A stretch of DNA of 64,000 nt from Trichosphaerium sp. ATCC 40318. Its lineage: Eukaryota > Protista > Tubulinea. How positions within the stretch are numbered: the stretch's first letter is position 1; each line of letters begins with the position of its first letter. The stretch lies in assembly GCA_038496445.1 (NCBI GenBank), contig JALMLS010000326.1, positions 17,373 through 81,372 on the forward strand, given 5' to 3'. A program made the translations under genes and the position numbers. Below are positions 29,101 to 61,877 of the stretch, piece by piece. The notes under the pieces were generated by a model that was not told where the DNA came from, made no database searches, and worked only from the letters and a program-made list of their open reading frames with translations.

Positions 29101-32100
29101 TACTTGAAACAACCGTACGCTTTTGCTTTCTTTAGCTTGTTATTGGTACTTACTGCAACGCAATAGTAAAGAGAGCCGTGAAGCTTGTACTCAGAAGTTG
29201 ATGGATATGTGGCGTACTATGACACCTAGCCTACCACAAGAAGTGTTACAGTATTCCATCCTCAACCTACTTCGCTCGTTTAAACAAGAGACTGCCTCAT
29301 GTGGTATGAGCTTAGCTGCTGCCATTATAGAGAGATTAGACGTACGTGAAAATAGAAGGCTGTCTAAAATTGTGTGGTGCTAACATTGCTGTAGTCGAAA
29401 TCTTTGGATGAAAAATCTCGTGTATTACTTTTCAAATCAGTTATGCCAAAGTTGTTTGCACTTGGTGCAAAGACAGATGATGGTTCTGGTATCATAGCCA
29501 TCGTTGCTTTGGTGAGATTGATTCGCTTGAGTCCTAGAAGCCAGCAACAAACACAGTTCCGAGTTCTGTTTGCGAGTACGTCTTAGTTCTTACCAAGTAA
29601 AATGCATGTTGGTTCTTATACAGTTCTTTAGAGGTTGTTGAACAACTCCTTTCACGCAAAGCGGAAATGCGAGCATGGGGTAACAAGACTCTTGTAGAAG
29701 TCACTACACAAATTGGACCTGAGTGGTTATCATACATTGTACAGGAGCTCAGTGATCGCATGACTGCCGGATTCAAGGTACTACGATTTTACTAAGATAT
29801 CTCATGAGACTTACAGCAATCTTTAGCGCCACGTATTTGGTGTAGCTATTCGTGATATCTTGAAGAGTATCAGACCTCCTGTGTTTAATCATGGTGTAGT
29901 GGATGAGGTCATTGATAATGTGATGGATATCAGCATAGAACACTTGATTGGTAAAGTATCAGACGAAAAGAAGCTTGTTGCTATAACTTCCAAAGTACCT
30001 GAGGCTAAAGCAACACCTACTGTAGACACGTACGTCGTATTCAGAGGCTCGCAATCATAGCCACAAAGTAACAGGTGTACATAGCATGAAGTACTTGGCT
30101 ACATCTATAGACTTCTTTAGAAGTGTCAGAACAATTCTCGCGCGATTTAAAGAAGCTTTCAATCAACCTATTGAAGGAAAGAAGCGTGGACAACTTTCTA
30201 GTGGTGTATACAGCTTTGTTAGCGAGTTGTACACAAATACAACGATGACTATGAGGGACATGCTACTACTCCTACACAAAGAGATGGAAGAGCTCATAGC
30301 TGTTGTTCCAGTGCAAAAGCCTGAAGTAGAAGATCAATTCAGACACATGCGCGTATGTCAACGTTCTCTTTTCCTCAAAAGTTTTATTCTAAACTCTTGC
30401 TTATAGCAGGAGAAAACGTTCAAGTTAATGGGCTCCGACAGACCGAAAGTGCGACCGGAGGATATGGATAACCGACATTACTTGCTTTCAGCTTTGTTGT
30501 CACTTTTAAGACGTTGTTTGGAGCACAAGAGGATCAAACCAACAACGGAGAACCTTGGGCTACTTGAACCTGTACGGGAGGACCTCTTATTTTGTATTTA
30601 CTGACTGCAGTATGTAGTTTGTGTCACTGCTTCATCAAATGCTTCACCACCGTGTGGCACGTGTTAAAAAGCAAGCTATGCTGTGCTTGATGCACTTTCC
30701 ACACTCGAAAAGATCGCCGGCTCAAACCAAGCTAAGGCCTGCTATACTTGAACAGTTAATTCAAGTTATAAGGGTACTCATAACACTCAATATCACTAAT
30801 GATGATTTCTCGCTAACATATGTCCTTGTAGCGCTCCAAATTACACTCAAACACTGGCGATGTTGCTTTGGAGGTGTTGACAAATATCTTAAAACAGACA
30901 GGACATAAGCAACTTCCAGAAAAAGATATAGACATATTGATCGATCACTTCCGTGTTGATCTAATGGAGAATCACAATGTTGATCTCACGAAACCATTTG
31001 AGTTTTTTAGAGTACGCCATTACCAAAATATTTTAAAAGCGCTTGTTGGTTGTGTACTGACACATTTGTTCGCACATTAGATGTTAATTTCGGGCCGGTT
31101 CATGTCTCCTGGTTTGTATGATGCTATTGACAAGATTGGACATCTTATCCTTAATGCTACTCATGATAAGACGCGTAATGTTGCGCGTCAATTGTATATT
31201 ATGTTTTTATGTGAGTACCCTATGGAGAAGAAGAGATTTGTCAAGCACTTAAACTTCCTTCTTTCAAATTTGGAATATCCAACGCCTTCAGGAAGAAGAA
31301 CACTTTTGGATACATTGTGGTCCTTTTTGGGCGTTGTTGATGATAAGATAGCGTCAACTTATTCAGGCTTTATGTTCCTTCCAATAGTTGTTGCATTTGC
31401 AAATGAGACTGATCCGGAATGCAGAAAGTATGCCACTCTATTGCTTGAAAGATTGATCGGTACGCTCTTTTTTTGAAAAAACTTCAATTCAAATCTGACG
31501 CAGTTCGAATTTAGAGATCTGTTGGGCGACTAAACGTGATTGGTTGTTATCTACTGTTACGAAGTGGCTACATAACCATACTCAAAAGTAAGTTTTTTCG
31601 ATTGGATTAGCGCTGTATTTCATTGTAAGCTAAACTTTTATTAGTGGCGTTGACAAAAACGGTGATGCAGAGCCTGACGTACTTGAACTAACAGCGCTAC
31701 GTTTGGTGGCAATGTTTTCAAAAGTATTGAAATCAAAGCTAAGAGAACATTCCTCGTCGCTATTGTCTCATCTCTCAACGTATATCAGCGCAGCTGCAAC
31801 CCCAAGCACTGGTACAATCCCACGTGATTTTAGAACCAACTAACAGTTGTTGCAGTGCAAGGAAAGGGTGAATGGAAGCGAATATACTTGTCATTATTGG
31901 CTGTAGAGGAGATGTTGAAGTCAAGCCAAGTCTCTTATTTTTCGGAAGAGATGAAGCCAATAACGCTATCTTTGGAAGACGCTCTTGTTTTCCCACATCA
32001 ATGGATAAGGTACCCTCAACTTTGGAATCATGTTATACTCACCAAGCGAACGTTTAGGCAAACAGCAACAAGATTAGTAGCGAGGTTATTCAGTGTTCTA

Positions 32101-32766
32101 AACAAGCAAACAAAGAGATTAATGAACTTTGATTTGAGCTTTTACTACAACATTATGGCATCTTCATTCAAGCAATTACAAAGCGAAAACTTAAAGGAAG
32201 AGCACTTACAACAAATAACGAAGAATATCTTATTCATATCATTGAGAGGGTACACTTCATGGCGTGGATTAGGCAAAAGGAAATTGCCTCCTCAACTGAG
32301 AAGCAAAGCTAAAACACCAATTCCTTTTGTTGCCTACGCCTTTGAATCATACTCATCTGTGGCATGCCAAGGTATTAATCAAATTAATGCATCTCTGATG
32401 TTCTATGCTGCAATGGCTTCTCAGATGGAAGAGGAGCATGTTAAACATTTTGTTGATACCATAGCAAACGCCATTTATCGCGTATATCAAGACAAGCAAG
32501 CGCCTAAAGAAATGAAGCAAACAGCTGGTCAAACAATGGAACTTATAAAATCTAAAGTCGGTGATACCGAGTTTGCTAGTGCATTGAATCGTGCAAAACG
32601 TGGATTGGAAGAAGGTATCGCCACAAATCCAAAAATGAAGAAACTTCAAAAAGTAGCTGGGTTTGCGAAGAAGCGACCTCTTGAAGAATCAAAACGCGAT
32701 TCAAATAGACCCAGCATACGTGTCAAACGTAGGAAACTACAAAAGATGCTGCAGGATGAATTGTAA
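23176..32766 (+). CDS. UTP20: U3 snoRNA-associated HEAT-repeat protein, SSU processome component 20
   Basis: VATLPQVIVNKDKI, FARDLQADFYPYF, FVAESFSFLVRK, FLCEYPMEKKRFVKHLNFLLSNLEYPTPSGR, ANETDPECR, FPHQWIR. Very large multi-exon gene. Confidence 0.9.
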
Positions 32767-34573: not shown

Positions 34574-37048
34574 TCACTTAGAGATATTGACCTGTGGATG
34601 TAACAATGTGACAGGTGTACCATGGTTTTGTTTTCTCGAAATGCTGGCGTGAAGAAGTGCATAGCTGACGCTGGGTAGTTTTCGAATTCTATATCCCGCT
34701 ATGTACCTAGGAGTGGAAAAGTTGCGCTCACAGGACAATGAGATAAAGCAAAACAGTTTGGAAAACAATCTGTTTTTATTTGAAATATAAACTTACAACT
34801 CTTCAACAAGAAATTCTCCATCACCGTCCTTGGTTTGAAAAGTACCAAGGTCCAGCTTTGCCAACTGTAACATACAGTCAGTGTCATTAGCTTGTACGCC
34901 AAGTTTAGTATCTATGCTGTCAGCTTGTTGTTCTCCCTCAAGGAAGCAAGAAGAGGAACAGGCAACGTTGTAAACGTTGATTTTTCCTTTAATCAGACCT
35001 CCCTCGAATGCAGTTGCTATCACTTTGACGTCTAGTTCGGGATGCGATGAATATAGATCAATTCTGCCATCGTAGTTGTACTTGTATGCTTTGTAATTGA
35101 AGTAATAGACAGTGTTGTCAGCCCTGAAAGAAAACAATAATTTAGCAATTTTGAAAAAAGAAATGTGTGTGAGACGAACCCTGTGCGAAGATCAGGAACC
35201 GGCTTTGTTGACACGTAAAAAATCATATCGCCAATAACTTCAACTTGCATACATACCCTTTGCGAGTTGGCATTGCACCCACCCAGCTTTTCATCAACAG
35301 TAATGTGCATTGTAAAAGCACCTCCTCTTTTAATCTCAACATTATCCATGTCGTAGGTCCCAATCTTGTCAACCGTATACGTTTGAACGTCCTTTAGGGG
35401 TACAGCGTCGACCTTTTGTCCGTTTATGCCTTCCAAGTTGGAATACTTTGCCTGGCCGCTCCCACAATATTGCCTTCTTTCTGTTCTCCATAAATCACCA
35501 TTCCATTTCGCAAGGTTATAAAAGTGCATCCACCCATTTTTGGAGCGCATATATGGATACGAAGCATAATCCACGCCAATCATATTCTGTACTAGATAAT
35601 ATAGAACAGTTTCAAAAGCTTGTGCCGAAGCTTTTCGTTCTGGAGACAATAATCCATAAAAGAGCCAGAATACAGCAGCGCTATTGGCATTGTTATTTGG
35701 TGACAAAGGGGTGTACTGTGTCTCCAGAGCAACCCAAAAAGGTACAAAGCAATATCTATTATTATAAGTGGGCTCTAGAGGACTCTCGGTAGGGTTTTCA
35801 AAAGCATAAGTCCACCTGTCCCCTTGTACAAGGCCTAAACAGAAATAAGAGTCTGAGCTGGAAAAAAATAAGAAAAAGCCAAGCATCACGTACCGGTTAC
35901 AGCAAGCGCTGCCCAAGCGGCTGAGCTTTCGATAAACATTTTTGCTTTGGTGAATTCATCTCCGTCTAAGTTGTCTGCACCAAAGTTGTATTGTACGTAG
36001 TGAAACAATTCGTGAGCCGTTGCTTCGCGAGCTTTCAAATCATTGCTCATACCCTCAGAATTCAATTTCATTGGGCCGTCGCTAGGCGAAGAACCCAGCA
36101 ATTTTGGATCCATTGCATAAATGTTAACTTGGCATTTGGAATTCTCATCGTTAAAAGGCATTTTACGTGCAGTGAACCACTCGGCATAAACATTCCAAGC
36201 TTCATCTAGATGTTGTGCTACCTTCTCCGCATATTCCGATGTAAATTGATCTTCTGGGGTACCACCAGTGCAGTTCTCGCACCAGTTGAGCATAAATCTG
36301 CTATATCCAAAAGTATCATGGTGGTTAAAGCAAGGAGGGTCACCTTGGGTGCAGTCATGTTCCGTTTCATTTTCTTTTTGTTTTCTGATGATTCCATAAA
36401 AAGGTCTTGTTTTTTTTCGTTTTCATTTTCTTGTTGATTGTCAGATCCTGGAAGGTCGTAGTTTACAATACCCCTATAAAAAGGAAACCCACATTCGCCA
36501 ACCCTTTGTACCAGGTATTGACCAACCAGTTCCCAACCAGAGTCGGCTTCAGGGCATACAGAACTCGATGAGTAGTTTGAAGAAGTGCCATCCATTCCGG
36601 AGATGCCATGGTAGATACAACATGCACCTTTACCATAATGGGATCCATCAAGAGTCACGGTATTGGGAGGTTTCTCGTTGTACGGTTGTACGCCTCCTTT
36701 CATTTTTTGGTAGTAGCAATCTTTGTTACAATCCTTTGCACCCCACCCCGTAACAGTGTAGTCATCAGGGAACGGAACGGTAATGGTTTGCCTGCCGGCG
36801 TACGGTGTCGTGGAGATGTAACAGATGCGGTTACCGGAAACTAGACCTGGATTTGGGATGATATATGCCCAGACGCAGTTTTTAAAGTAGACAGGCTGTA
36901 TTAGTGTTAGTACTCGGGTTTTTTTGTGTTCGAGTTTTTGACAGTTGCGTACGTCTGCTTTTGCTTCTGATTCTAGTTTTGTTTCGGCAAGTGTTAAGGG
37001 AGCGTAGAGTAATATGCAAAACAGCAAGCATTGTAGAGAAGCTGACAT
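34574..37048 (-). CDS. Secreted zincin-like (HEXXH) metallopeptidase with Cys-rich N-terminal domain; apparent frameshift near 36370-36420
   Basis: Signal peptide MSASLQCLLFCILLYAPLTLA. TAHELFHYVQY followed by MFIESSAAWA (likely third-ligand Glu). Only ~3 introns. Confidence 0.7.
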
Positions 37049-37462
37049 GGTGCTTGCTTTGTTGGTTTTTAGTTTTTTGATTTTAAAAGTCAGGAGGTAC
37101 TGAAACGTTTTTTCGATGAAATTTTGATACCAAGATTTCGTTTGGTCTGAAACGACTTTTTTCATAGAAATGTACAATTGTAATTTGAAATGTTATTTCT
37201 ACGAAAAAGGTTATGCCGATTGTTGTTTGTAATCTAAAAGTCAAAACTGCGGCCAAACTATAATAAGGGCGAAAAATAAATAAAAATTGCAAGTACGTGG
37301 AAGACTATTTTCAGTGAAACTTATTTAAATAACAACACAGAAACAAGGTGAACAGCTTTTTATGCGAAATCAAATCACAGCAAAAACGTAGTGGTGATCC
37401 TTGAGCATTAGTGAGACTTCAGTTTCAGATGTCGTTGTGAAGATGTTGAAAGGTGTTTCATC

Positions 37463-39230: not shown

Positions 39231-40269
39231 TTAACTTATAACGTTGAACGTAGACCTAGCACATGTACGTAGCCACCTGGTAGTATTTTAAAACACTTTG
39301 TAGGAATAAAAAATGTATACCTTTGCCTAGATAGTTTTTTATACCAGGTACTAAACTTGGTCCAATCCCACTCGAACGATGGATTGTGCACAGCGAGCAC
39401 TTGAGGCCATAGTTTAATAAAACCATATCCAGCTCTTGACGATAGCTGCTCAATTGATACACGATACCTATTAATACATTTTTGTTAGTTATTGCATCAC
39501 TCAATGGAGGCTCCAAAATATTGTACCAATCTTCATGGCTTTTTATACTGTGACTATCTTCTAGCTCCTTTAAAAAAGCAAATTGACGGGTTTTGTCCTT
39601 CCAGTAGTTCCTTGGTGCAAACCTAGATTGCCAATCAGCTTCAACGTCGACTAGTATTCTAAATGAAATGTGTACTTGAAACTCAATGCGTTCCAGTTGT
39701 GATTTGGGTACAACGTAGAAAGGCACGAAGATAGTGAGCTGTTATAGTAATTCCTTAAAGTGTGGGGTTAAAACTAGAGAGATTGAAGACAAAAACCATA
39801 CTTTAGGATGGCACGTGCGCCACAGTCTATAACGTCTTGGTTTACTACCTTGTACCAGTCGTCAAGTACCTTCACTTGGAGTCCTTCTGCTACTACGTTC
39901 AGTTTAGCTGTCTGGTGATGAGTGGCTTGCCACTGTCGATGACCTGCTCGGCTAAGACATCCATTAGCACGACTTTAAAATAGCGTTGTAGTGCCTGAAA
40001 CTGTAGCGATTCCATGGATATTGTGGATACGCTGCTTCAAGCCATTTTGATAAGGAACCGTCGTAGTGGTATCTATTTACAAGCTTAGTTTTACTATTAA
40101 AGGTAGTAAGTCACCTCAACAGCCTCAATGTAGTCGACACGTTCGCAATTGCGGGTTCTTGGACGTCATACCATTCATCCAAGCTCTTAATGCGCATTTT
40201 CTGCCCTAAAGCTTCTAATGCCGTTTTACCCACCACATAATGGCGAATGGAACACTTTAGGTGCAGCAT
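39231..40269 (-). CDS. Short paralogue of the 1780-3939 repeat protein (3 repeats, no nuclease domain visible)
   Basis: IKSLDEWYDV...AAYPQYPW, KVLDDWYKV...TLYPNHNW, IKSHEDWYRV...WPQVLAVHNPSFEWDWTKFS. Ends RWLRTCARSTFNVIS*. Confidence 0.65.
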
Positions 40270-54503: not shown

Positions 54504-57500
54504 TTATAAGTTGTTGTCAGCTTCTTGTTCTTTGTCTGATGGTGTCTTTTTAGGACCAATCTATTCAATTATATTAGCTATAATAACTTTTAATACTGTA
54601 TAAAAGCGTACCAAAGAGAGTACTACAGGAAGTAACACTAGAGCATGCAATACACCCAAAAGTGTAATGCTGAAAAATTGACGGAAGAAAACTTGAAAGA
54701 TGAACGACTTCGAAAACGCTAGTACAAGTACAGCTAAAAATGTTGATACAGCGCCATTCAATACTGCTCCGCCAACATCAACAAGCTTTAAAAACACCAA
54801 GAGTTAGCAAATAAAACAGCAAAGACACTTAAAATCAAAACGAGTAAAAAAAAGAAAAAATGAAGACTTACTGCTTTGTAAATCCTTTCATCATTGCTTC
54901 CACTCTCTTGTAGGTACGCATGGCCAATATGAGTTGAATAATCGACTGCAATACCAACCGCAAGAACCAAGTTAATAACGGACACCTAAACCCACGTGGG
55001 TCAGCACAAAACACAAAAATGTTGTAAATTGTTTTTCGAATACGTACAACGTCTAGATTGATACTCCATAGCCACATGACACCAAATATATCGATAAGAG
55101 TCATCAACACACAAACAAATACAGTCTAGGAAAAAAAATGAGCTACTTTGCAAAAATCTCGAAGTGTTTTGTTTCCTTGTACGCACCACTGACACAAAAA
55201 GGTTTCCTAGTAGTAGAACAGTGACTATGAATACCGCTGCAAGTGCTAGTAGGAGATTGACAAGAATCTCTCTTTGGATGATGGCATATTGATCAAACTC
55301 CAAAAAGCTGAAAGAGTAAGGGTATGCATGAAGTCCTGAGTTGTCCACTGTATTTCTGATACTTCTTGTAGCATCTACTTGATCAAGTGCTTTAGTAAGT
55401 GCAATCAATCTAGAGTACATCCTAGAAGCACGAATAGCTGTTTGAGAACCTGAATAAAGTCAGAAATCATGAAACTTGCAGTGCATTAATTGGTTTTCAG
55501 TGATATACCATTTTGGAACGTGATGTCATTGCTGTATCTTGCTCCTTCTGTCAAAAGCCAAGAGCTGAGTGTGGAGTGCCATGTTTCGGTATCATTTGGG
55601 GCTTGATTCGTACGATTGAGGTAGCCTTCGAAATCTATAAACCATCCAGTAACAGCTAAAAATCATTTAGTTGTTGATCTTTGTACAAGAGACTGGTGGT
55701 CGTACACGATTCGATGAACTCGTTCGAATTGACTTCTTCTATCATCCCCAGAACCCTTTCCTTCATTTCAAAATGATCAAACTCTCTGGTGACAAGAAAA
55801 ATTGGTACTCTGTCATCTTGGAAGAACGAATCTTCTACCTCGGAGTACTCTAAAAAACAGTCTTAGAACCAGACACGGTCGAAAGCCAAAAAAACGTACC
55901 TAAAGCGTAAGAATCACTTGGCAAGAAAAATACAGGATCGAACTCAGGTTGTGTTTGGATGACACCGTAAATACCAATACCCAAAAATACAATGAACACG
56001 AAAATCTGTGAAAGACCATTTAGGTAAAAATATCCGTGCGACAGACGTACAACGATAACTTTGGCGATGTTCCACTTTAATAGGTATTCAGCGTAATAAT
56101 GCCAAACTCGTCCGACGAAAGTCTCTAATTTGCCTGCTTTCTTTTCTTCTTCAGAAGGCTTATTAACACTGCAACAACAACATTCTCTCCTGCGGCCTTT
56201 CTGGCGACGAGTATCAAGTGCCAAAATGGCTGTGAATAGCGTAACTTGAAGCAAGTATACTAGAGCCACACCAATAGATGCGTATTTACAGAATGAACTG
56301 AGAGCAGGTAATACAGTAATACTACCAATAGCAAAGGCAAGCAAATCGGTCAATGATGTTACAGTAACTAAATTGTGAGTGAGCACAAAACATCAACTCC
56401 AAAACTCAAAACGTACTTGCTGCACCAGCAGAGCTAAGCGCTGAAGCAACGCGCTTTACACTTGAATCTTTTGGGTTCGTACGATCCAATGCATTTACGC
56501 TAAAGAAAGTTAGTACTGGTAGAGTTAAGGAAAGGTTAAAAAAAGAACTGGAAAAAAAGCTAAACTAGAAAACCAAAGTGTTGACGACGTACATGATGAA
56601 CATATCATCTACACCAATACCAAGTAACAAAAAAGGTAATACAGATTGTACAGGTGCGTAGAAAAAGCCCATGGCAGATGCAAGACCAAAAGATCCACCA
56701 ACACCCATGCCAATAGACAAGATACCACACAAAGGTACGACAACTAATGAGAAAAAAGTAAGAAAATTGTACCCAATCAAACTCCGAGAGATATACCTCG
56801 TGTCTTAACTGTATGTAGTTTTGTGAACATGAGAAGGACATATGATATGATCAAGAAATATCCAATACCCAAAAGTTGTAGATCTCCACTTAGAGCATTA
56901 GAAAACTCATCACCAAATGATTTCTACAAAAAAACAATTAGTAATCGATTGCTATTGAAATAAAAACACGTGCCTCAGCGTTTGTAAATAGTTCAAAATT
57001 TTCAAAGTTTACGTTCAAGGTAAGCGCAAGGAAAACATCTTCTTCCCAGGTTGTCGCTGGTAAATCTACAAAATCGCCATTCTGAAAAACCTCCCTGTTC
57101 TCAAGTGTGTACGAAAAGAAAAGTGCTCTTCCGCTAGCACGACCGTTTTCCTCAGTGTAGCCACTAATCAATGCCTTTAAGTCAGTATCATTGACTACAG
57201 CATTGGCAACACTTTGTTGGACATCTGGATCATTATTTAAAGCGATCTCATCGAAATCCCAGACGGACTAAAACATATTAAAGAAATTCATTGAAGACTT
57301 AAAAAAAAATCATAGGTCGGTTTTTGATCCCACCAAAAAAACGTACCAGTATTGATCTTAGGATACAATTATCGAAAGAGTCTTTTAGGCAAAGAGAAGT
57401 AAAATTCCACTGTTCGCCTTCCACCTATTTTATTGTGAGTTGTTTCTAACGTGTCTAACGTATTACAGAAGTAGAATTTATGGTTGTTTATACGTACTGT

Positions 57501-57896
57501 GATTGTCGTATTCACGATTTTGTCATGCAACTCCAGAAGCTCTAAAAGGGCGGCTTTATTGATCACATTTGTTCCAGTCGCTATATACTCCTCGAATCTT
57601 GGCGCTCTGTTGAAATTACTCCGGAAATCGCCTAAAGTTAAAACTGCTTCGCTATGGTGTCTTAGAAAAGCAAAATAAACACGCACATACCTGTTACCAG
57701 GTACCCAGAGTCTCTCTTCTCGATTCTCTTGTTCAAAGTTAATAAACCCAATCATCAACGCTCCAACCAATGCAAAACTCAATACGATAACCAATATAGG
57801 ATGCTCTGCATCAAATTTGCCGACTTGGTAGAAAAACCATTGAACGCCTTTCTCAGACTTCTTGGCAGCATAATTTACGAACCCACACTTCTTCAT
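54504..57896 (-). CDS. Patched/NPC1-like sterol-sensing RND membrane protein
   Basis: ERLWVP, PFLLLGIGVDDMFI, TSLTDLLAFAIG, LPALSSFC, AVGIAVDYSTHI, VLNGAVSTFLA, GVLHALVLLPVVLS. Confidence 0.92.
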
Positions 57897-58606
57897 TGCG
57901 GTGAGTGGTGCTTCTTGTGTTAGTTATGGAGAAATGACTTTTGAATACCGCCGAAAGACCGAAAACACTCTTAAACGATACCCTTTACAACGTTATATAC
58001 GTGTTAGGTTAATATAAGCCTCGTTTATTTTTCTCCGCGTACTATGTTACGACACATGTTCAACGAAAATTTTCGGACAAGTACAAAAAAATAAAGCCGG
58101 TTTAGAACAATTTGGTAAACTTGTCAGTATGACTGTAATGCCATTGTGGTGTTTAGTACGCCGGATGCAAAAAACACCGGAACCGGCGTTTTCCTTTGTA
58201 AAAGTGGCGGAATACTATTGCTCGTTTTACAACGTCACGGGCTCTAAAAATCCCTTACACACACGTCGCAGGGTAAACAAACAATAGAACTAGTGGAGCT
58301 ATTCTTGAATTCAATGCGTACATGCATGGAAAAATTCTCAAAATTACGATACAAACAAAAACGTGATTTTTCCGGTTGAATTGCATAGAATGAACAGAAA
58401 GTGGGTGCATGTAATTTTTTACAAATCTAGAATTATACATTCAATACTTTGGAAGATACTGAGACAGGTATTTATTCACAAGCGTCTGCCACAAGTTCGA
58501 ATTTTTAAGATAGAAAAAATTTTGCATTTTGAAATCGAAATATCTCCTTGATAGTGTCTTGCTATATGGAAGATCAGCACAAGATCCCCACATGAACAAT
58601 CATATC

Positions 58607-58681
58607 TTTTGAAAAGCCTCCGCCCCACCCGTTGAATAATATTCATTTCCAGGCGAGTACATCTCAGGCATTGTTCCAAAA
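58607..58681 (-). promoter_or_regulatory. Candidate form-II SECIS element with non-canonical core
   Basis: Minus strand: UUUUGGAA caau GCC uga GA UGUaCUCGCCUG gAAA UGAAU auu AUUCA a CGGGUGGGGCG GA GGC u UUUCAAAA. Shows helix I, tandem GA/GA, helix II, AAA bulge and apical minihelix, about 90 nt after the stop. Confidence 0.65.
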
Positions 58682-58769
58682 CGCATCTCTTAGGTTTTTT
58701 TGTATTTTTTTTTGAACTTGTGGCACTGACTGAGGATTTTCTCGTCCTCCTCTGTCTCTAATCTTTATA

Positions 58770-59701
58770 TTATCCCTTCACAGCCTTCTCTGCTGCTTCT
58801 AGAATATCTTCATTCTTTGGTGTATCAATAAAAAAGCCTTGTAAATGAGTATAGCTGGTTTTTGGACCAGGTCCAAAAACAAAAGTTCCACCGAGAAAAC
58901 TAAGAATATTAGAATCTCAAAAAACGTGGTACAATACGTACGGATCTGAACCATTCATGTTCCCTTTAGGAATACTTCCACCAAGCTCAGCTTTTAAAGC
59001 TTTATTCAGTCTACCTAGTTTAGGATACTTCCATACTATCGAATAAAGGTAAGCTTGGCGATCAAGATAAAAGTTATTACGAATAAAGTCTTTCGAAAAC
59101 TTTCGCATTTCTCCGCGAAACTCTGTTTAAACTGTTGTTCTTACCTTTCATTAGATCTACAAGTCCACCGGCTTTTTGAGCTTGAGCGCCCAAGGCCTTG
59201 TGTAAGGCGTAGTCGTTGGCAAGAAATGCTCGACCAGGCCAAATGTTTGTTTGAACGAACTCGGCTGCGCCAAGGTCAGTGCCAAAGACACCTAGTTTTC
59301 TGTTATTGATCGTTCGGAATTAAATTGTTTCTATGGATCATCAAAATGCCAGCATATTGTTAAACATAATGTGGAAACGCGTACCAATGAGTTCTACACC
59401 AAGTTCTTCGAGTTTGGGTTGTATTTGTGCTAAAACGGCTGCTTCGCCTCTGGTCCACTGTCACCCAGATCTACGTGAACGTTAACGCCACATACAGTGC
59501 TTGAAGTAGGATTACCTTCGAAACAACCTTAAAACTATTGGTTTTTCACCGTACAAACTCTCTAGCGTGCACTTTTCGCCATTAGAGCCATCCTTTATTG
59601 TAAGATAAGTATAGCAATAACGATCGATAAATAACCTCTTTAGAGAGCTCTGTGAGCTCAACATTAGCAATTTGGTCAAAGAAATCGCTCTTCTCCGCCA
59701 T
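58770..59701 (-). CDS. Peroxiredoxin-like 2 (PRXL2/SelU, AhpC-TSA_2 type) protein with in-frame UGA, candidate selenoprotein
   Basis: Six GT-AG exons give MAEKSDFFDQIANVEL...EKPIVLRLFRRSG[UGA]QWTRGEAAVLAQIQPKLEELGVELIGV...GSDPFLGGTFVFGPGPKTSYTHLQGFFIDTPKNEDILEAAEKAVKG*. Confidence 0.85.
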
Positions 59702-60009
59702 GTTTGGATGATTGAAGTGTTTTTTGATTTATGTGCTGAACTTAAAACGTTAATCCGAATTAATGAGTATTCTGGTAGCGTACTCAGTTGAAATGTGTCT
59801 CAGTATTTATTTTAACCATACTTGCCTTAATTGACTATGTTGCCCCAAAATGTTCAGTATTTTTCTAGTACAACGGAATAGCATCACCAATTTACATTAA
59901 TAATTAAACGCAGAGTTGTTAGAAATCAAAAAGTGTAGTCTTCTGTCATATACAATCAACTTCTGTCTATTGCATTATAACCGCACAACAGTACGTATAC
60001 GATATACAG

Positions 60010-61877
60010 ATGAACACGCCGCCACGACCGTACAGAAAGCACTCAGCTCGTAAAAGCGAGCGTAAAAAACGCGTCATCAAGGTGGGTGGTTCATTTCGCG
60101 CGCAGTTAGATCAAAAACTAACTCCAAAAAGGCGACAGATTACCGAACGTTGCGAAATAACGCTGCGCCGCAGTTACGATTCGTTACAGATGAAGAAGCC
60201 GATGATTGGTGGCAAGCCGCTTCACTTGTACGCCTGTTCGACTTTTTTGAGTTTTTGCGCTAGTTACGTATTTACAACGTGTAGGGTAACGTAGCTTCAG
60301 TCAAGGATGTAATAACAGCGCTTCAGAAGCGACAAGCTTTATCTTACTTTGAAAAGTGCACGCTACGGTACTACGTAGGTACGTACAACGCTGATCCTCA
60401 TTTTTAAACCGCTTATCATGCTCACTTTCAGAGAAGATCACAGACGGACAAAGCAACTAGAAAAATCCAAGTTTATAACGTTCGTTGCAGCGTTTGGCGA
60501 TTTGGACACTTATTTGCAAAACGTATAACAGAAAAAAAACCAAAAATGAAATATTAAATAGTGAATTAGGCTTGTGCACTTTTTGACGAACGTTGCTTTG
60601 TTGGACATCTCAATGCTGCTGATGCAAGTCTTATATTAAAAGGACAACCTCTTGGTACCTTCTTGGTTCGATTCAGTGCTTCAGACCAGCACCTAAGCGC
60701 AAGCACGTGAAAGACATGTGTTTTCTTTTTTTTTTTTTGCGCTTTTTATTTTTTTTTTTGGGTTACAACGAGCGGTGGATGTCTGATTTTTTGGTTGTAG
60801 GTTATATTGATGGAAGCGCACGCGTGAACCATTTGAAAATTTTTTTGAGAAAAGGGAAGTTTACTATCCGCACGGGAGAGGTTTTTGCGAAACTATACGC
60901 TGTCTTGAACCACTACAGAAGCTACTTGCGTTTCGAGTACAGGATGGGACTATTACTTAAACACAGGTACGTATTGTGACCACCCCTTGAAGTTGTTTAA
61001 GATGATGTTATCTCGTTGTTAACGAATTGTAAGATATTTTGTTGTTGATTGTAATCAACGACAAGCTCAGCTCATATTGGCCAAGAAAAAAGTAGGAAGG
61101 TATGATAAGAGTATTGATGGTTAACACACGTACTCACTTTTTTAGTTTTTTGTTTCGTCTTGGCAAGGTGCCCTGTAATATTGTACTAAGTTACAAAGTT
61201 AATGAAAATGAAATAATTCATCAAAACTTGCCCATGACAGAGAGTAGAGGTTCCCTGAAGTTTCATTTCGGTGAGCACAAGCATGATAGTCTTATTGATA
61301 TAATGCGGACACATTCAAATGAATTAAAGTACCCTCAAGAGATTGGTGCACGGATGCCAATACGCACGTGTTTCTGCCTACGTTTGACTAACTTTTATCA
61401 GAAATAAGCAAGCTCCGTGAGTATGCGATGTATGGTACTGATTTAGAGATGGAAATCTCAGCGCTAGAAGTACCTACATGGCTTGGTGCTACTGATAATA
61501 CAACAATGCTACGTGCGGTAGAGACATTGTTGTTATTGTGTTCTGAACGAGGTACACTAAAAAAAAATTATTTATGTATTAAGCTATCTTGTACTTAGAA
61601 ATGCAGAATATTATTGCAGACCATAATAGAATGGATTTTATAATATCGTTGCTTGAAGGAGAACACAGTCCTGACCCAGAAGTAGCAAAGAACTGCAGAA
61701 AACTAGTACAAGTCTTTCAACAAAATGGTAAAATATTTTCTTTTTCGTTTCGCTTTGAACTTAACATTTTACGCTCGTGATTGGTAATTTGCCAACTTTT
61801 TTTGTCAATTTGTCAATTCTGTCAACTATCTCTTACTATGTAGTGCAGGTAAGATGTGTGCTTGTAATAAGTATTAA
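60010..61877 (+). CDS. Tandem SH2-domain protein
   Basis: SH2 1: CFVGHLNAADASLILKGQPLGTFLVRFSAS...VNHLKI. SH2 2: CNQRQAQLILAKKKVGSFLFRLGK...IVLSYKV...IIHQ. 3' end uncertain. Confidence 0.75.

What the first reader, a model, noticed from the sequence alone, without database searches (positions are those of the whole stretch)
58770..59701. Hidden selenoprotein: PRXL2/SelU-like gene with in-frame UGA in a UxxT redox motif
Seen: after removing canonical introns (59635-59593, 59515-59471) the frame reads LRLFRRSG-TGA-CAG-TGG-ACC, with TGA at 59463-59461 (codon 51), and continues intact through further exons to the family C-terminal motif LGGTFVFGPG. The alternative nearby acceptor (tgacag|) shifts frame into a stop, so splicing cannot remove the UGA. 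Established: PRXL2/SelU proteins carry RRxG-C/UxxC at this position, and UxxT is the glutathione-peroxidase-type motif. Inference: this is a Sec-containing PRXL2 with no resolving Cys (UQWT), a variant that standard gene callers would split or truncate.
Basis: partly seen in the sequence, partly recalled or inferred. Interest (0 to 1): 0.88.

Follow-up and report, generated by a model that had tools for sequence, protein, structure and literature searches.

The report
Probable selenoprotein: PRXL2-like peroxidase gene
A small, expressed six-exon protist gene for a peroxiredoxin-like (PRXL2/SelU-type) enzyme carries a UGA exactly where relatives have the catalytic cysteine, so it very probably makes a selenocysteine protein, but the recoding hairpin in its 3'UTR is not the textbook form.

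Summary
A six-exon minus-strand gene (59701-58770, 199 codons) has an in-frame TGA at 59463-59461 (codon 51). Spliced contigs from four public runs and one JGI transcript show all five junctions. Three of those runs (X1, X8, X12) and the transcript cover the codon and read UGA; no form skips it.

The product passes Pfam AhpC-TSA_2. Its only solved relative is prostamide/prostaglandin F synthase (PRXL2B). Codon 51 aligns with the first Cys of the PRXL2B CxxC motif, and Thr54 with the second. The active site is therefore U-Q-W-T.

Rfam finds no SECIS. The 3'UTR does hold a hairpin (58681-58607) with SECIS geometry, in which the invariant core UGA reads AGA. It lies inside a 163-nt domain that does not vary among four other alleles, while the rest of the UTR carries 11 variants.

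Best reading (about 0.7): a real selenoprotein that acts as a GPx-style peroxidase on a PRXL2 fold and is recoded by a non-canonical SECIS. Selenium incorporation, the Sec machinery and orthologues could not be tested.

Sec-containing SelU and bacterial UxxS AhpC-TSA_2 proteins are already known, so this is a new variant of a known kind. The scan has untested notes of similar UxxT PRXL2-like genes on other pieces of this genome.

The parts
59636..59701 (-). Exon 1, with start codon ATG at 59701-59699 (codons 1-22). The 5'UTR reaches at least 59759.
   Evidence: junction 59635/59591 in X1 and X8; L001 starts at 59759
59516..59592 (-). Exon 2 (codons 23-47 plus 2 nt)
59385..59470 (-). Exon 3, carrying the active-site motif RRSG-U-QWT
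59461..59463 (-). In-frame TGA, codon 51. It aligns with the catalytic first Cys of the PRXL2B CxxC motif.
59145..59291 (-). Exon 4 (matches AhpC-TSA_2 profile positions 24-62)
58942..59035 (-). Exon 5
58770..58899 (-). Exon 6 coding part, with the LGGTFVFGPG motif and the TAA stop at 58772-58770
58455..58769 (-). 3'UTR (315 nt). AATAAA lies at 58476-58471 and the poly(A) site is near 58455.
58523..58685 (-). Invariant, structured 163-nt 3'UTR domain. It is closed by a 12-bp stem (58685-58674 with 58534-58523) and encloses the SECIS-like hairpin and a second hairpin.
   Evidence: folds. No variant in four non-reference alleles, against 11 variants in the other 152 nt of the UTR.
58607..58681 (-). 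SECIS-like type-II hairpin.
- Helix 1: 58681-58674 with 58614-58607.
- C-stem: 58669-58667 with 58618-58616.
- 3-nt bulge: 58666-58664.
- Helix 2: 58660-58650 with 58631-58622.
- AAA: 58648-58646.
- Helix 3: 58645-58641 with 58637-58633.
- Apical loop: 58640-58638.
   Evidence: Not recognised by Rfam.
58662..58665 (-). 5' core 'GAGA', where a canonical SECIS has AUGA. G58663 and A58662 would form the tandem sheared pairs.
58619..58620 (-). 3' core GA, the partner of the tandem G.A/A.G pairs

Best explanation
This is a real, expressed gene for a 199-residue thioredoxin-fold protein of the AhpC-TSA_2 (PRXL2/SelU) family. UGA-51 is read as selenocysteine.

Shown:
- the spliced mRNA carries the UGA;
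- the UGA sits on the nucleophilic first Cys of the family's CxxC motif;
- the second Cys is Thr, giving U-Q-W-T;
- the catalytic domain lies entirely downstream of the UGA.

Inferred:
- Recoding is driven by a type-II SECIS-like kink-turn hairpin in the 3'UTR (58681-58607). It has tandem G.A/A.G pairs, a 10-bp helix 2, an AAA run 13 nt after the core and a mini-helix 3. Its first quartet base is A (AGA/GA) where a canonical SECIS has U.
- The enzyme works like a glutathione peroxidase on a PRXL2 scaffold. The Sec selenolate reduces a hydroperoxide or endoperoxide to give a selenenic acid. Because no resolving Cys is in the motif, an external thiol (glutathione or thioredoxin) recycles it.
For: - Gene model and frame.
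- All five junctions in four runs from four studies, with the UGA unchanged in X1, X8 and X12.
- An independent JGI transcript reads TGA at this codon, although its deposited protein shows W there.
- Pfam AhpC-TSA_2 scores 44.4 bits (cut-off 27) over residues 62-176. Single exons hit the same profile in order.
- PDB 9us9 (prostamide/PGF synthase) matches at E 1.3e-5, ungapped across the site, with residue 51 on Cys of RRFG-C-VV-C and T54 on the second Cys.
- The protein-language search gives AhpC-TSA_2 clusters at 0.96.
- My relaxed SECIS descriptor hits once in the UTR. It hits 8 of 1500 shuffles (1 as good) and only 2 other cores in 128 kb.
- The K-turn fold costs 0.9 kcal/mol over the MFE.
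- The whole UTR folds with z = -4.0.
- The 163-nt domain around the hairpin has 0 variants, against 11 in the remaining 152 nt of the UTR. For a domain fixed in advance, (152/315)^11 is about 3e-4.
- CDS differences downstream of the UGA are 3 synonymous changes and 1 Ser-to-Asn change.
- Literature: Sec-SelU occurs in Ostreococcus and Thalassiosira (PMC2375036). A GGA/GA SECIS core works in Toxoplasma SelT (PMC2647825). UxxT is the GPx motif (PMC1088965).
Against: - Rfam's SECIS models give no match, even at E<=10 on the 95-nt hairpin alone.
- The hairpin breaks the rule that UGA/GA is invariant (PMC2647825). Its 3' quartet base is G, not A/U, and helix 2 is at the short end of the range.
- My descriptor was relaxed after I had seen the hairpin, so it is post hoc.
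- No orthologue or paralogue was retrievable, so there is no covariation evidence and no test of UGA/Cys conservation.
- The Sec machinery of this genome is known to me only from untested scan notes.
- The structure model was useless (pLDDT 35).
- No protein-level evidence exists.
Confidence: 0.7

Rival explanations
1. Sec is inserted, but the working SECIS is the overlapping candidate with a canonical AUGA core (58646-58643), AA at 58633-58632 and GA at 58601-58600. The GAGA K-turn hairpin would then not be the SECIS.
For: It has canonical AUGA..AA..GA letters and 6 of 8 flank pairs. It lies in the same invariant domain.
Against: AUGA-to-AA spacing is 9 nt, outside the 10-13 rule (PMC2375036). 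Helix 2 has only about 7 A-U-rich pairs, against 11-16 bp expected (PMC2647825). Forcing this fold costs 12.8 kcal/mol because it breaks the G+C-rich stem. Rfam does not see it either.
Confidence: 0.1
2. The UGA is a true stop. A Cys codon (TGY) mutated to TGA and the change became fixed. The mRNA would then yield only a 50-residue peptide, making this a young pseudogene.
For: No canonical SECIS is present. TGY to TGA is a single-base change. No homologue carrying UGA was found.
Against: The UGA is present in every allele and dataset that covers the codon. All splice sites and 148 downstream codons are intact. Downstream changes are mostly synonymous. Word depth of the transcript's contigs is similar to that of the neighbouring gene in X8 (contig depth is a poor measure of expression), despite a premature stop upstream of three junctions. 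A SECIS-shaped invariant element sits in the UTR.
Confidence: 0.12
3. UGA-51 is decoded without selenium, either by near-cognate readthrough (Trp, Cys or Arg) or because the organism reads UGA as Trp, as in the deposited JGI translation.
For: P0001 in the public collection shows W at residue 51. UGA followed by C is a leaky context (general knowledge).
Against: The contig behind P0001 has TGA and does not translate to P0001 under the standard or bacterial code, so the W comes from the translation table. All three Trp residues of the protein use TGG. Trp or Arg at the nucleophile position would kill a thiol or selenol enzyme. Scan notes describe many UGA-plus-SECIS genes in this genome (untested).
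Confidence: 0.06

Closest known systems
Selenoprotein U / PRXL2A-C (Pfam AhpC-TSA_2, PF13911), including prostamide/prostaglandin F synthase PRXL2B (PDB 9us9)
   Same: Same Pfam family above the cut-off. The RRxG motif precedes the redox centre, and Sec/Cys sits at the same aligned column. Sec-containing members are known in fish, birds, Ostreococcus and Thalassiosira (PMC2375036).
   Different: The second Cys of the CxxC/UxxC motif is Thr (UQWT), so no intramolecular selenenylsulfide can form within the motif. The sequence is very divergent: 28 bits to PRXL2B, and no other hit in searches of a 5.8-billion-sequence (full length) and a 1.84-billion-sequence (exon 4 only) collection. The SECIS is not canonical.
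Glutathione peroxidases (UxxT/CxxT motif)
   Same: The same CxxC-derived UxxT redox motif, with Sec first and Thr fourth (PMC1088965). A one-Sec peroxidase cycle with external thiol recycling is the likely chemistry.
   Different: This protein is not a member. There is no GSHPx Pfam hit, and the scaffold is AhpC-TSA_2. The Gln and Trp next to Sec here are adjacent in sequence, whereas in GPx they come from distant loops. Any catalytic role for them is speculation.
Bacterial AhpC-TSA_2 selenoprotein with UxxS, and SelL / SelL-related redox proteins
   Same: Sec lies at the first motif position on the same fold, with a hydroxyl residue at the fourth (UxxS; table in PMC9312934). There is a weak NCBIfam match to SelL_rel_redox.
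   Different: This gene is eukaryotic and spliced, and its recoding signal is in the 3'UTR. The NCBIfam score of 18.5 bits is far below the cut-off of 120.
Eukaryotic type-II SECIS element, and the GGA/GA SECIS of Toxoplasma/Neospora SelT
   Same: A kink-turn with tandem G.A/A.G pairs, an unpaired purine 5' of the quartet, a G:C pair just above the quartet, AAA 13 nt after the core, 26 nt from AA to the 3' GA, and a helix 3 with a 3-nt loop (rules from PMC2375036, PMC2647825, PMC3753652). The Toxoplasma case shows that the U of UGA can be replaced.
   Different: The first quartet base is A (AGA/GA). I found no report of this in the papers read. The 3' quartet base is G instead of A/U. The hairpin sits in a Y-shaped 163-nt domain. 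No Rfam SECIS model matches it.

Membership tests
AhpC-TSA_2 / PRXL2 (SelU) family | Pfam PF13911 match above the gathering score | tested here: met
   44.4 bits against a cut-off of 27, residues 62-176 of P0001, which equals the model with W written at codon 51. Exons 4 and 6 alone hit profile positions 24-62 and 94-111.
AhpC-TSA_2 / PRXL2 (SelU) family | Redox-active Cys or Sec at the first position of the motif after RRxG | tested here: met
   HMMER alignment to 9us9_A puts RRSG-[TGA]-QWT-R against RRFG-C-VVC-R.
AhpC-TSA_2 / PRXL2 (SelU) family | Second (resolving) Cys of the CxxC/UxxC motif | tested here: not met
   Thr54 aligns with the second Cys. The only Cys in the protein is C30, at a non-conserved column.
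AhpC-TSA_2 / PRXL2 (SelU) family | Thioredoxin fold with the motif between strand 1 and helix 1 | tested here: inconclusive
   The single-sequence AlphaFold2 model has mean pLDDT 35.5. The strand 41-46 and helix 55-70 pattern fits, but confidence is too low to use.
Eukaryotic selenoprotein (UGA = Sec) | In-frame UGA retained in the mature mRNA | tested here: met
   Spliced contigs of X1, X8 and X12, and JGI contig L001, all carry the UGA.
Eukaryotic selenoprotein (UGA = Sec) | UGA aligns with Cys (or Sec) in homologues | tested here: met
   It aligns with the first Cys of the PRXL2B CxxC motif. This rests on one homologue only; no others could be retrieved.
Eukaryotic selenoprotein (UGA = Sec) | SECIS element in the 3'UTR | tested here: inconclusive
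   There is no Rfam SECIS match. A SECIS-shaped K-turn hairpin with an AGA/GA core is present, rare by chance and invariant.
Eukaryotic selenoprotein (UGA = Sec) | Sec machinery (tRNA-Sec, SBP2, eEFSec, PSTK, SepSecS, SPS2) in the genome | not testable with these tools
   None lies in the window. The only evidence is untested scan notes of a tRNA-Sec and many other UGA-plus-SECIS genes elsewhere in the genome.
Eukaryotic selenoprotein (UGA = Sec) | Selenium incorporated in the protein | not testable with these tools
   This needs 75Se labelling or mass spectrometry.
Eukaryotic SECIS element | Quartet UGAN/KGAW with invariant UGA/GA | tested here: not met
   The quartet reads A-G-A-U / G-G-A-G (58664-58661 / 58621-58618). 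The tandem GA/AG pairs are present, but U is replaced by A, and W by G (rule from PMC2647825).
Eukaryotic SECIS element | Core-to-AA distance of 10-13 nt and AA-to-GA distance of 15-39 nt | tested here: met
   The distances are 13 nt and 26 nt (rule from PMC2375036).
Eukaryotic SECIS element | Helix 2 of 11-16 bp; type II adds helix 3 and a small apical loop | tested here: inconclusive
   Helix 2 has 10 pairs plus one bulge (11 with the U.G closing pair). Helix 3 has 5 bp and the loop 3 nt. The length is borderline.
Eukaryotic SECIS element | Match to curated covariance models (Rfam SECIS_1 to SECIS_5) | tested here: not met
   No match at E<=10 on 2001, 326 or 95 bases.
Glutathione peroxidase family | GSHPx domain (PF00255) | tested here: not met
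   Pfam finds only AhpC-TSA_2 and a weak AhpC-TSA match. Only the UxxT motif is shared.

The most novel reading that the evidence does not exclude
UGA-51 is decoded as Sec through a kink-turn SECIS whose quartet begins with A instead of the otherwise invariant U (AGA/GA). It is embedded in a 163-nt invariant Y-shaped 3'UTR domain. That would be only the second natural exception to the UGA/GA rule, after the GGA/GA of Toxoplasma and Neospora SelT. The product would be the first PRXL2-fold selenoenzyme with a GPx-type UxxT centre, possibly one of a small paralogous group in this protist.
Probability: 0.45. Interest if true: 0.62.

Novelty: new variant of a known kind. Interest (0 to 1): 0.5.

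Why it matters
First, annotation. The only public protein for this gene (P0001) writes Trp at the active site, and no other deposited protein matching it was found. The gene is therefore invisible as a selenoprotein, and counts of this protist's selenoproteome will miss it.

Second, enzyme evolution. A UxxT centre on a PRXL2 scaffold would show that the change from CxxC to UxxT, which defines glutathione peroxidases, also happened independently in the SelU family.

Third, and of most interest to specialists, the recoding signal. If the AGA/GA hairpin is the working SECIS, SBP2-type recognition tolerates a purine at the flipped-out position. Current SECIS search tools, which require UGA, would then systematically miss such genes.

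Tried and rejected
- Rfam scans for SECIS or any RNA family on the whole window, 2001 nt, 326 nt and 95 nt found nothing relevant. There is no tRNA in the window.
- The canonical-letter SECIS candidate (AUGA 58646 ... GA 58601) was rejected as the main model. Spacing is 9 nt, helix 2 is weak, and it costs +12.8 kcal/mol.
- Reading the same hairpin with CUGA (58667-58664) as the core was rejected. It puts AA 15 nt away and needs a 2-nt bulge directly above the quartet.
- The CUGA candidate at 58577 was rejected for poor helices.
- My descriptor's other two hits (+36770 GGGA, +39665 AUGA) lie antisense inside minus-strand ORFs, so they are chance hits.
- Homologue searches returned only the gene's own transcript product. 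These were the exon 4 search against 1.84 billion representatives and the word-index search at E 1e-3 and E 10. The JGI metagenome scan found nothing.
- The joined protein with a stop has no reference, so it could not be handed to tools. I used the exons separately, and then P0001.
- The single-sequence AlphaFold2 model was too poor (pLDDT 35) for fold searches.
- Checking stop-codon usage in neighbouring genes was uninformative.

Full report
**1. The observation**

Reading the minus strand and assembling the exons in a script gives a six-exon gene. The exons are 59701-59636, 59592-59516, 59470-59385, 59291-59145, 59035-58942 and 58899-58770. The introns are 43, 45, 93, 109 and 42 nt, and all are GT..AG. 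The CDS is 600 nt, encoding 199 residues and a TAA stop.

There is one internal TGA, at 59463-59461 (codon 51), in the context LRLFRRSG-TGA-QWTRGEAA.

**2. Is the UGA real and in the mRNA?**

Logan contigs of four runs from four studies were laid on 57700-60100. All five junctions appear exactly as modelled, and no other joint was seen.
- X8 record 9 (937 nt) covers 58457-59725 with no difference from the window.
- X1 record 3 and X12 record 6 also cover the TGA without change.
- X2 does not reach the codon.

A search with exon 4 alone against 1.84 billion representative proteins returned a single protein, P0001 (199 aa, 100% identical). It comes from a 977-nt JGI transcript contig, L001. P0001 shows W at residue 51, but the contig reads TGA there, and the tool reports that the gene does not translate to P0001. 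The W is therefore a product of the translation table and not an allele.

The window DNA, three runs and one independent transcript all agree on TGA. Assembly error, RNA editing and splicing-out are excluded, as far as contigs can show. Contigs drop rare isoforms.

**3. What the protein is**

P0001 equals the model with W written at codon 51. It passes Pfam AhpC-TSA_2 (44.4 bits, cut-off 27, residues 62-176). Exons 4 and 6 alone hit the same profile, in order. The whole domain lies downstream of the UGA, so a 50-residue product would lack it.

The only solved relative is prostamide/prostaglandin F synthase, PRXL2B (9us9_A, E 1.3e-5). The alignment runs ungapped across the site. RRSG-[51]-QWT-R lies against RRFG-C-VVC-R. 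Codon 51 falls on the first Cys and Thr54 on the second.

A weak match to a BCP peroxiredoxin (3drn) puts Thr54 on the Ser that occupies the peroxidatic Cys position. That is the register expected for CxxC-derived motifs: TxxC in peroxiredoxins and UxxT in GPx (PMC1088965).

The feature search of the ESM Atlas gives AhpC-TSA_2 clusters at 0.95-0.96. NCBIfam gives only a weak SelL-related match.

The protein is very divergent. Word-index searches at E 1e-3 and E 10 and a JGI metagenome scan found no relative. I could not test whether orthologues keep UGA or Cys. The AlphaFold2 model without an alignment was unusable (pLDDT 35).

**4. The recoding signal**

The 3'UTR is 315 nt (58769-58455), with AATAAA at 58476-58471. 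The contigs of X2, X8 and L001 end at 58455-58465.

Rfam finds no SECIS. This holds at gathering score on the window and at E<=10 on 2001, 326 or 95 bases. That counts against a textbook SECIS.

By eye and by script there is a candidate with canonical letters: AUGA at 58646, AA at 58633 and GA at 58601. Its AUGA-to-AA spacing is 9 nt, while SECISearch requires 10-13 (PMC2375036). Its helix 2 has about seven A-U-rich pairs, against 11-16 bp expected (PMC2647825). Forcing this fold costs 12.8 kcal/mol.

A scan note on this window (s1-406702) pointed to a hairpin at 58607-58681. This hairpin is the thermodynamically preferred fold. Read as a kink-turn, it has the following parts:
- helix 1 of 8 bp (58681-58674 with 58614-58607);
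- a C-stem GCC/GGC;
- a 3-nt bulge, U-G-A (58666-58664);
- tandem sheared pairs G58663.A58619 and A58662.G58620;
- a U.G pair, then a G:C pair;
- a helix 2 of 10 pairs with one bulged A;
- an internal loop G-A-A-A (AAA at 58648-58646, 13 nt after the core, and 26 nt from AA to the 3' GA);
- a 5-bp helix 3 and a 3-nt loop.

Against the SECIS consensus (unpaired R, quartet UGAN/KGAW, G:Y above it; PMC2647825, PMC3753652) it differs at two points. The first quartet base is A instead of U, and its partner is G instead of A/U.

PMC2647825 states that UGA/GA is invariable, with one exception: the GGA/GA of Toxoplasma and Neospora SelT. Replacement of that U therefore has a precedent.

Keeping the core and the AAA unpaired costs only 0.9 kcal/mol over the MFE.

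I wrote a descriptor that relaxes only the U: NNGA, 10-13 nt, AA, 15-39 nt, GA, plus a helix 2 of at least 8 pairs ending at the AA and a lower duplex. It hits once in the UTR. It hits 8 of 1500 dinucleotide shuffles, with 1 as good. It finds only two other cores in the 128 kb of both strands. Both of those lie antisense inside ORFs of the other strand. The descriptor was written after I had seen the hairpin, so these figures are indicative only.

**5. Conservation within the species**

Four non-reference alleles cover the UTR: X1 record 1, X12 record 4, X2 record 7 and L001.

Their 11 variant sites lie at 58767-58686 (behind 58685) or at 58520-58487. None lies in 58685-58523.

That interval is exactly the domain closed by a 12-bp long-range stem (58685-58674 with 58534-58523). 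This stem appeared in the MFE of the whole UTR, which was computed before the variants were mapped (z = -4.0). The domain encloses the SECIS-like hairpin and a second hairpin.

For a domain fixed in advance, (152/315)^11 is about 3e-4.

In the CDS, the differences downstream of the UGA are three synonymous changes and one Ser-to-Asn change. The numbers are small, but they fit purifying selection on the reading frame after the UGA.

**6. Mechanism**

- Shown: the gene, the mRNA, the position of the UGA on the family's nucleophile, and Thr at the resolving position.
- Inferred: Sec insertion through the non-canonical SECIS.
- Also inferred: a GPx-like cycle, in which the selenolate attacks a peroxide and the selenenic acid is recycled by glutathione or thioredoxin, because the motif has no resolving Cys.
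- From my own knowledge, not tested here: PRXL2B reduces the endoperoxide PGH2 using thioredoxin and needs its first Cys. That fits a peroxide-reducing role.
- Gln52 and Trp53 next to Sec recall the GPx catalytic residues, but this is only a resemblance.

**7. Rivals**

- A fixed nonsense mutation (young pseudogene). This is disfavoured by the intact splice sites and the 148 intact downstream codons. It is also disfavoured by contig depth comparable with the neighbouring gene, a weak measure, and by the invariant SECIS-shaped element.
- Selenium-independent readthrough, or a UGA=Trp code. This is disfavoured because all Trp residues use TGG and because Trp at the nucleophile would inactivate the enzyme.
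- The canonical-letter candidate as the true SECIS. It is possible but energetically and geometrically poor.

**8. Known context and novelty**

Sec-containing SelU occurs in fish, birds, Ostreococcus and Thalassiosira (PMC2375036). A bacterial AhpC-TSA_2 selenoprotein with UxxS is listed in PMC9312934. UxxT is the GPx motif (PMC1088965).

A Sec-PRXL2-like protein is therefore a known kind. The UxxT centre on this scaffold and the AGA/GA core are the new aspects.

Scan notes report many other UGA-plus-SECIS genes in this genome. They also report a tRNA-Sec and two further PRXL2/SelU-like genes with U..T motifs, one said to have a canonical SECIS. I could not read those pieces, so I treat them as leads and not as evidence.

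**9. Verdict**

This is a new variant of a known kind, of moderate interest. Most of that interest rests on whether the non-canonical SECIS works.

Noticed in passing
P0001 / L001:59-658: The public protein collection holds this gene's product only once, from a JGI transcript contig. TGA was translated as W there, apparently because a UGA=Trp table was used. The active-site residue in the database entry is therefore wrong.
   Followed up: yes
window 58523-58685 (minus): The invariant 3'UTR block is larger than the SECIS-like hairpin. A 12-bp long-range stem encloses a second stable hairpin (about 58606-58545) whose role is unknown.
   Followed up: partly
window 39665-39735 (+): There is a hairpin with canonical AUGA..AA..GA letters and spacing (12-13 nt). 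It lies antisense inside a minus-strand ORF (39256-39726), so I judged it a chance match.
   Followed up: partly
window 39256-39726 and 40111-40269 (minus): Two ORFs share a similar motif (HEDWYNILEPP / DEWYDVQEPA). This suggests exons of a gene with repeated domains, or two paralogues.
   Followed up: no
window 31855-32766 (+): An exon encodes the C-terminal domain of UTP20 (small-subunit processome component; Pfam PF23099, E 8e-11) and ends in TAA.
   Followed up: no
window 55850-56386 (minus): An exon encodes a sterol-sensing/Patched domain (Pfam PF12349, E 3e-20). This would be a Patched, NPC1 or Dispatched-like membrane protein gene upstream of the neighbouring gene.
   Followed up: no
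window 57369-58011 (minus): The downstream neighbour is expressed (X8 contig of 2349 nt). Its 175-aa terminal ORF has no Pfam match.
   Followed up: no
window 36218-37177 (minus): A 319-aa ORF with no Pfam match, with a hydrophobic stretch and a Cys-rich middle part. It may encode a secreted or membrane protein.
   Followed up: no
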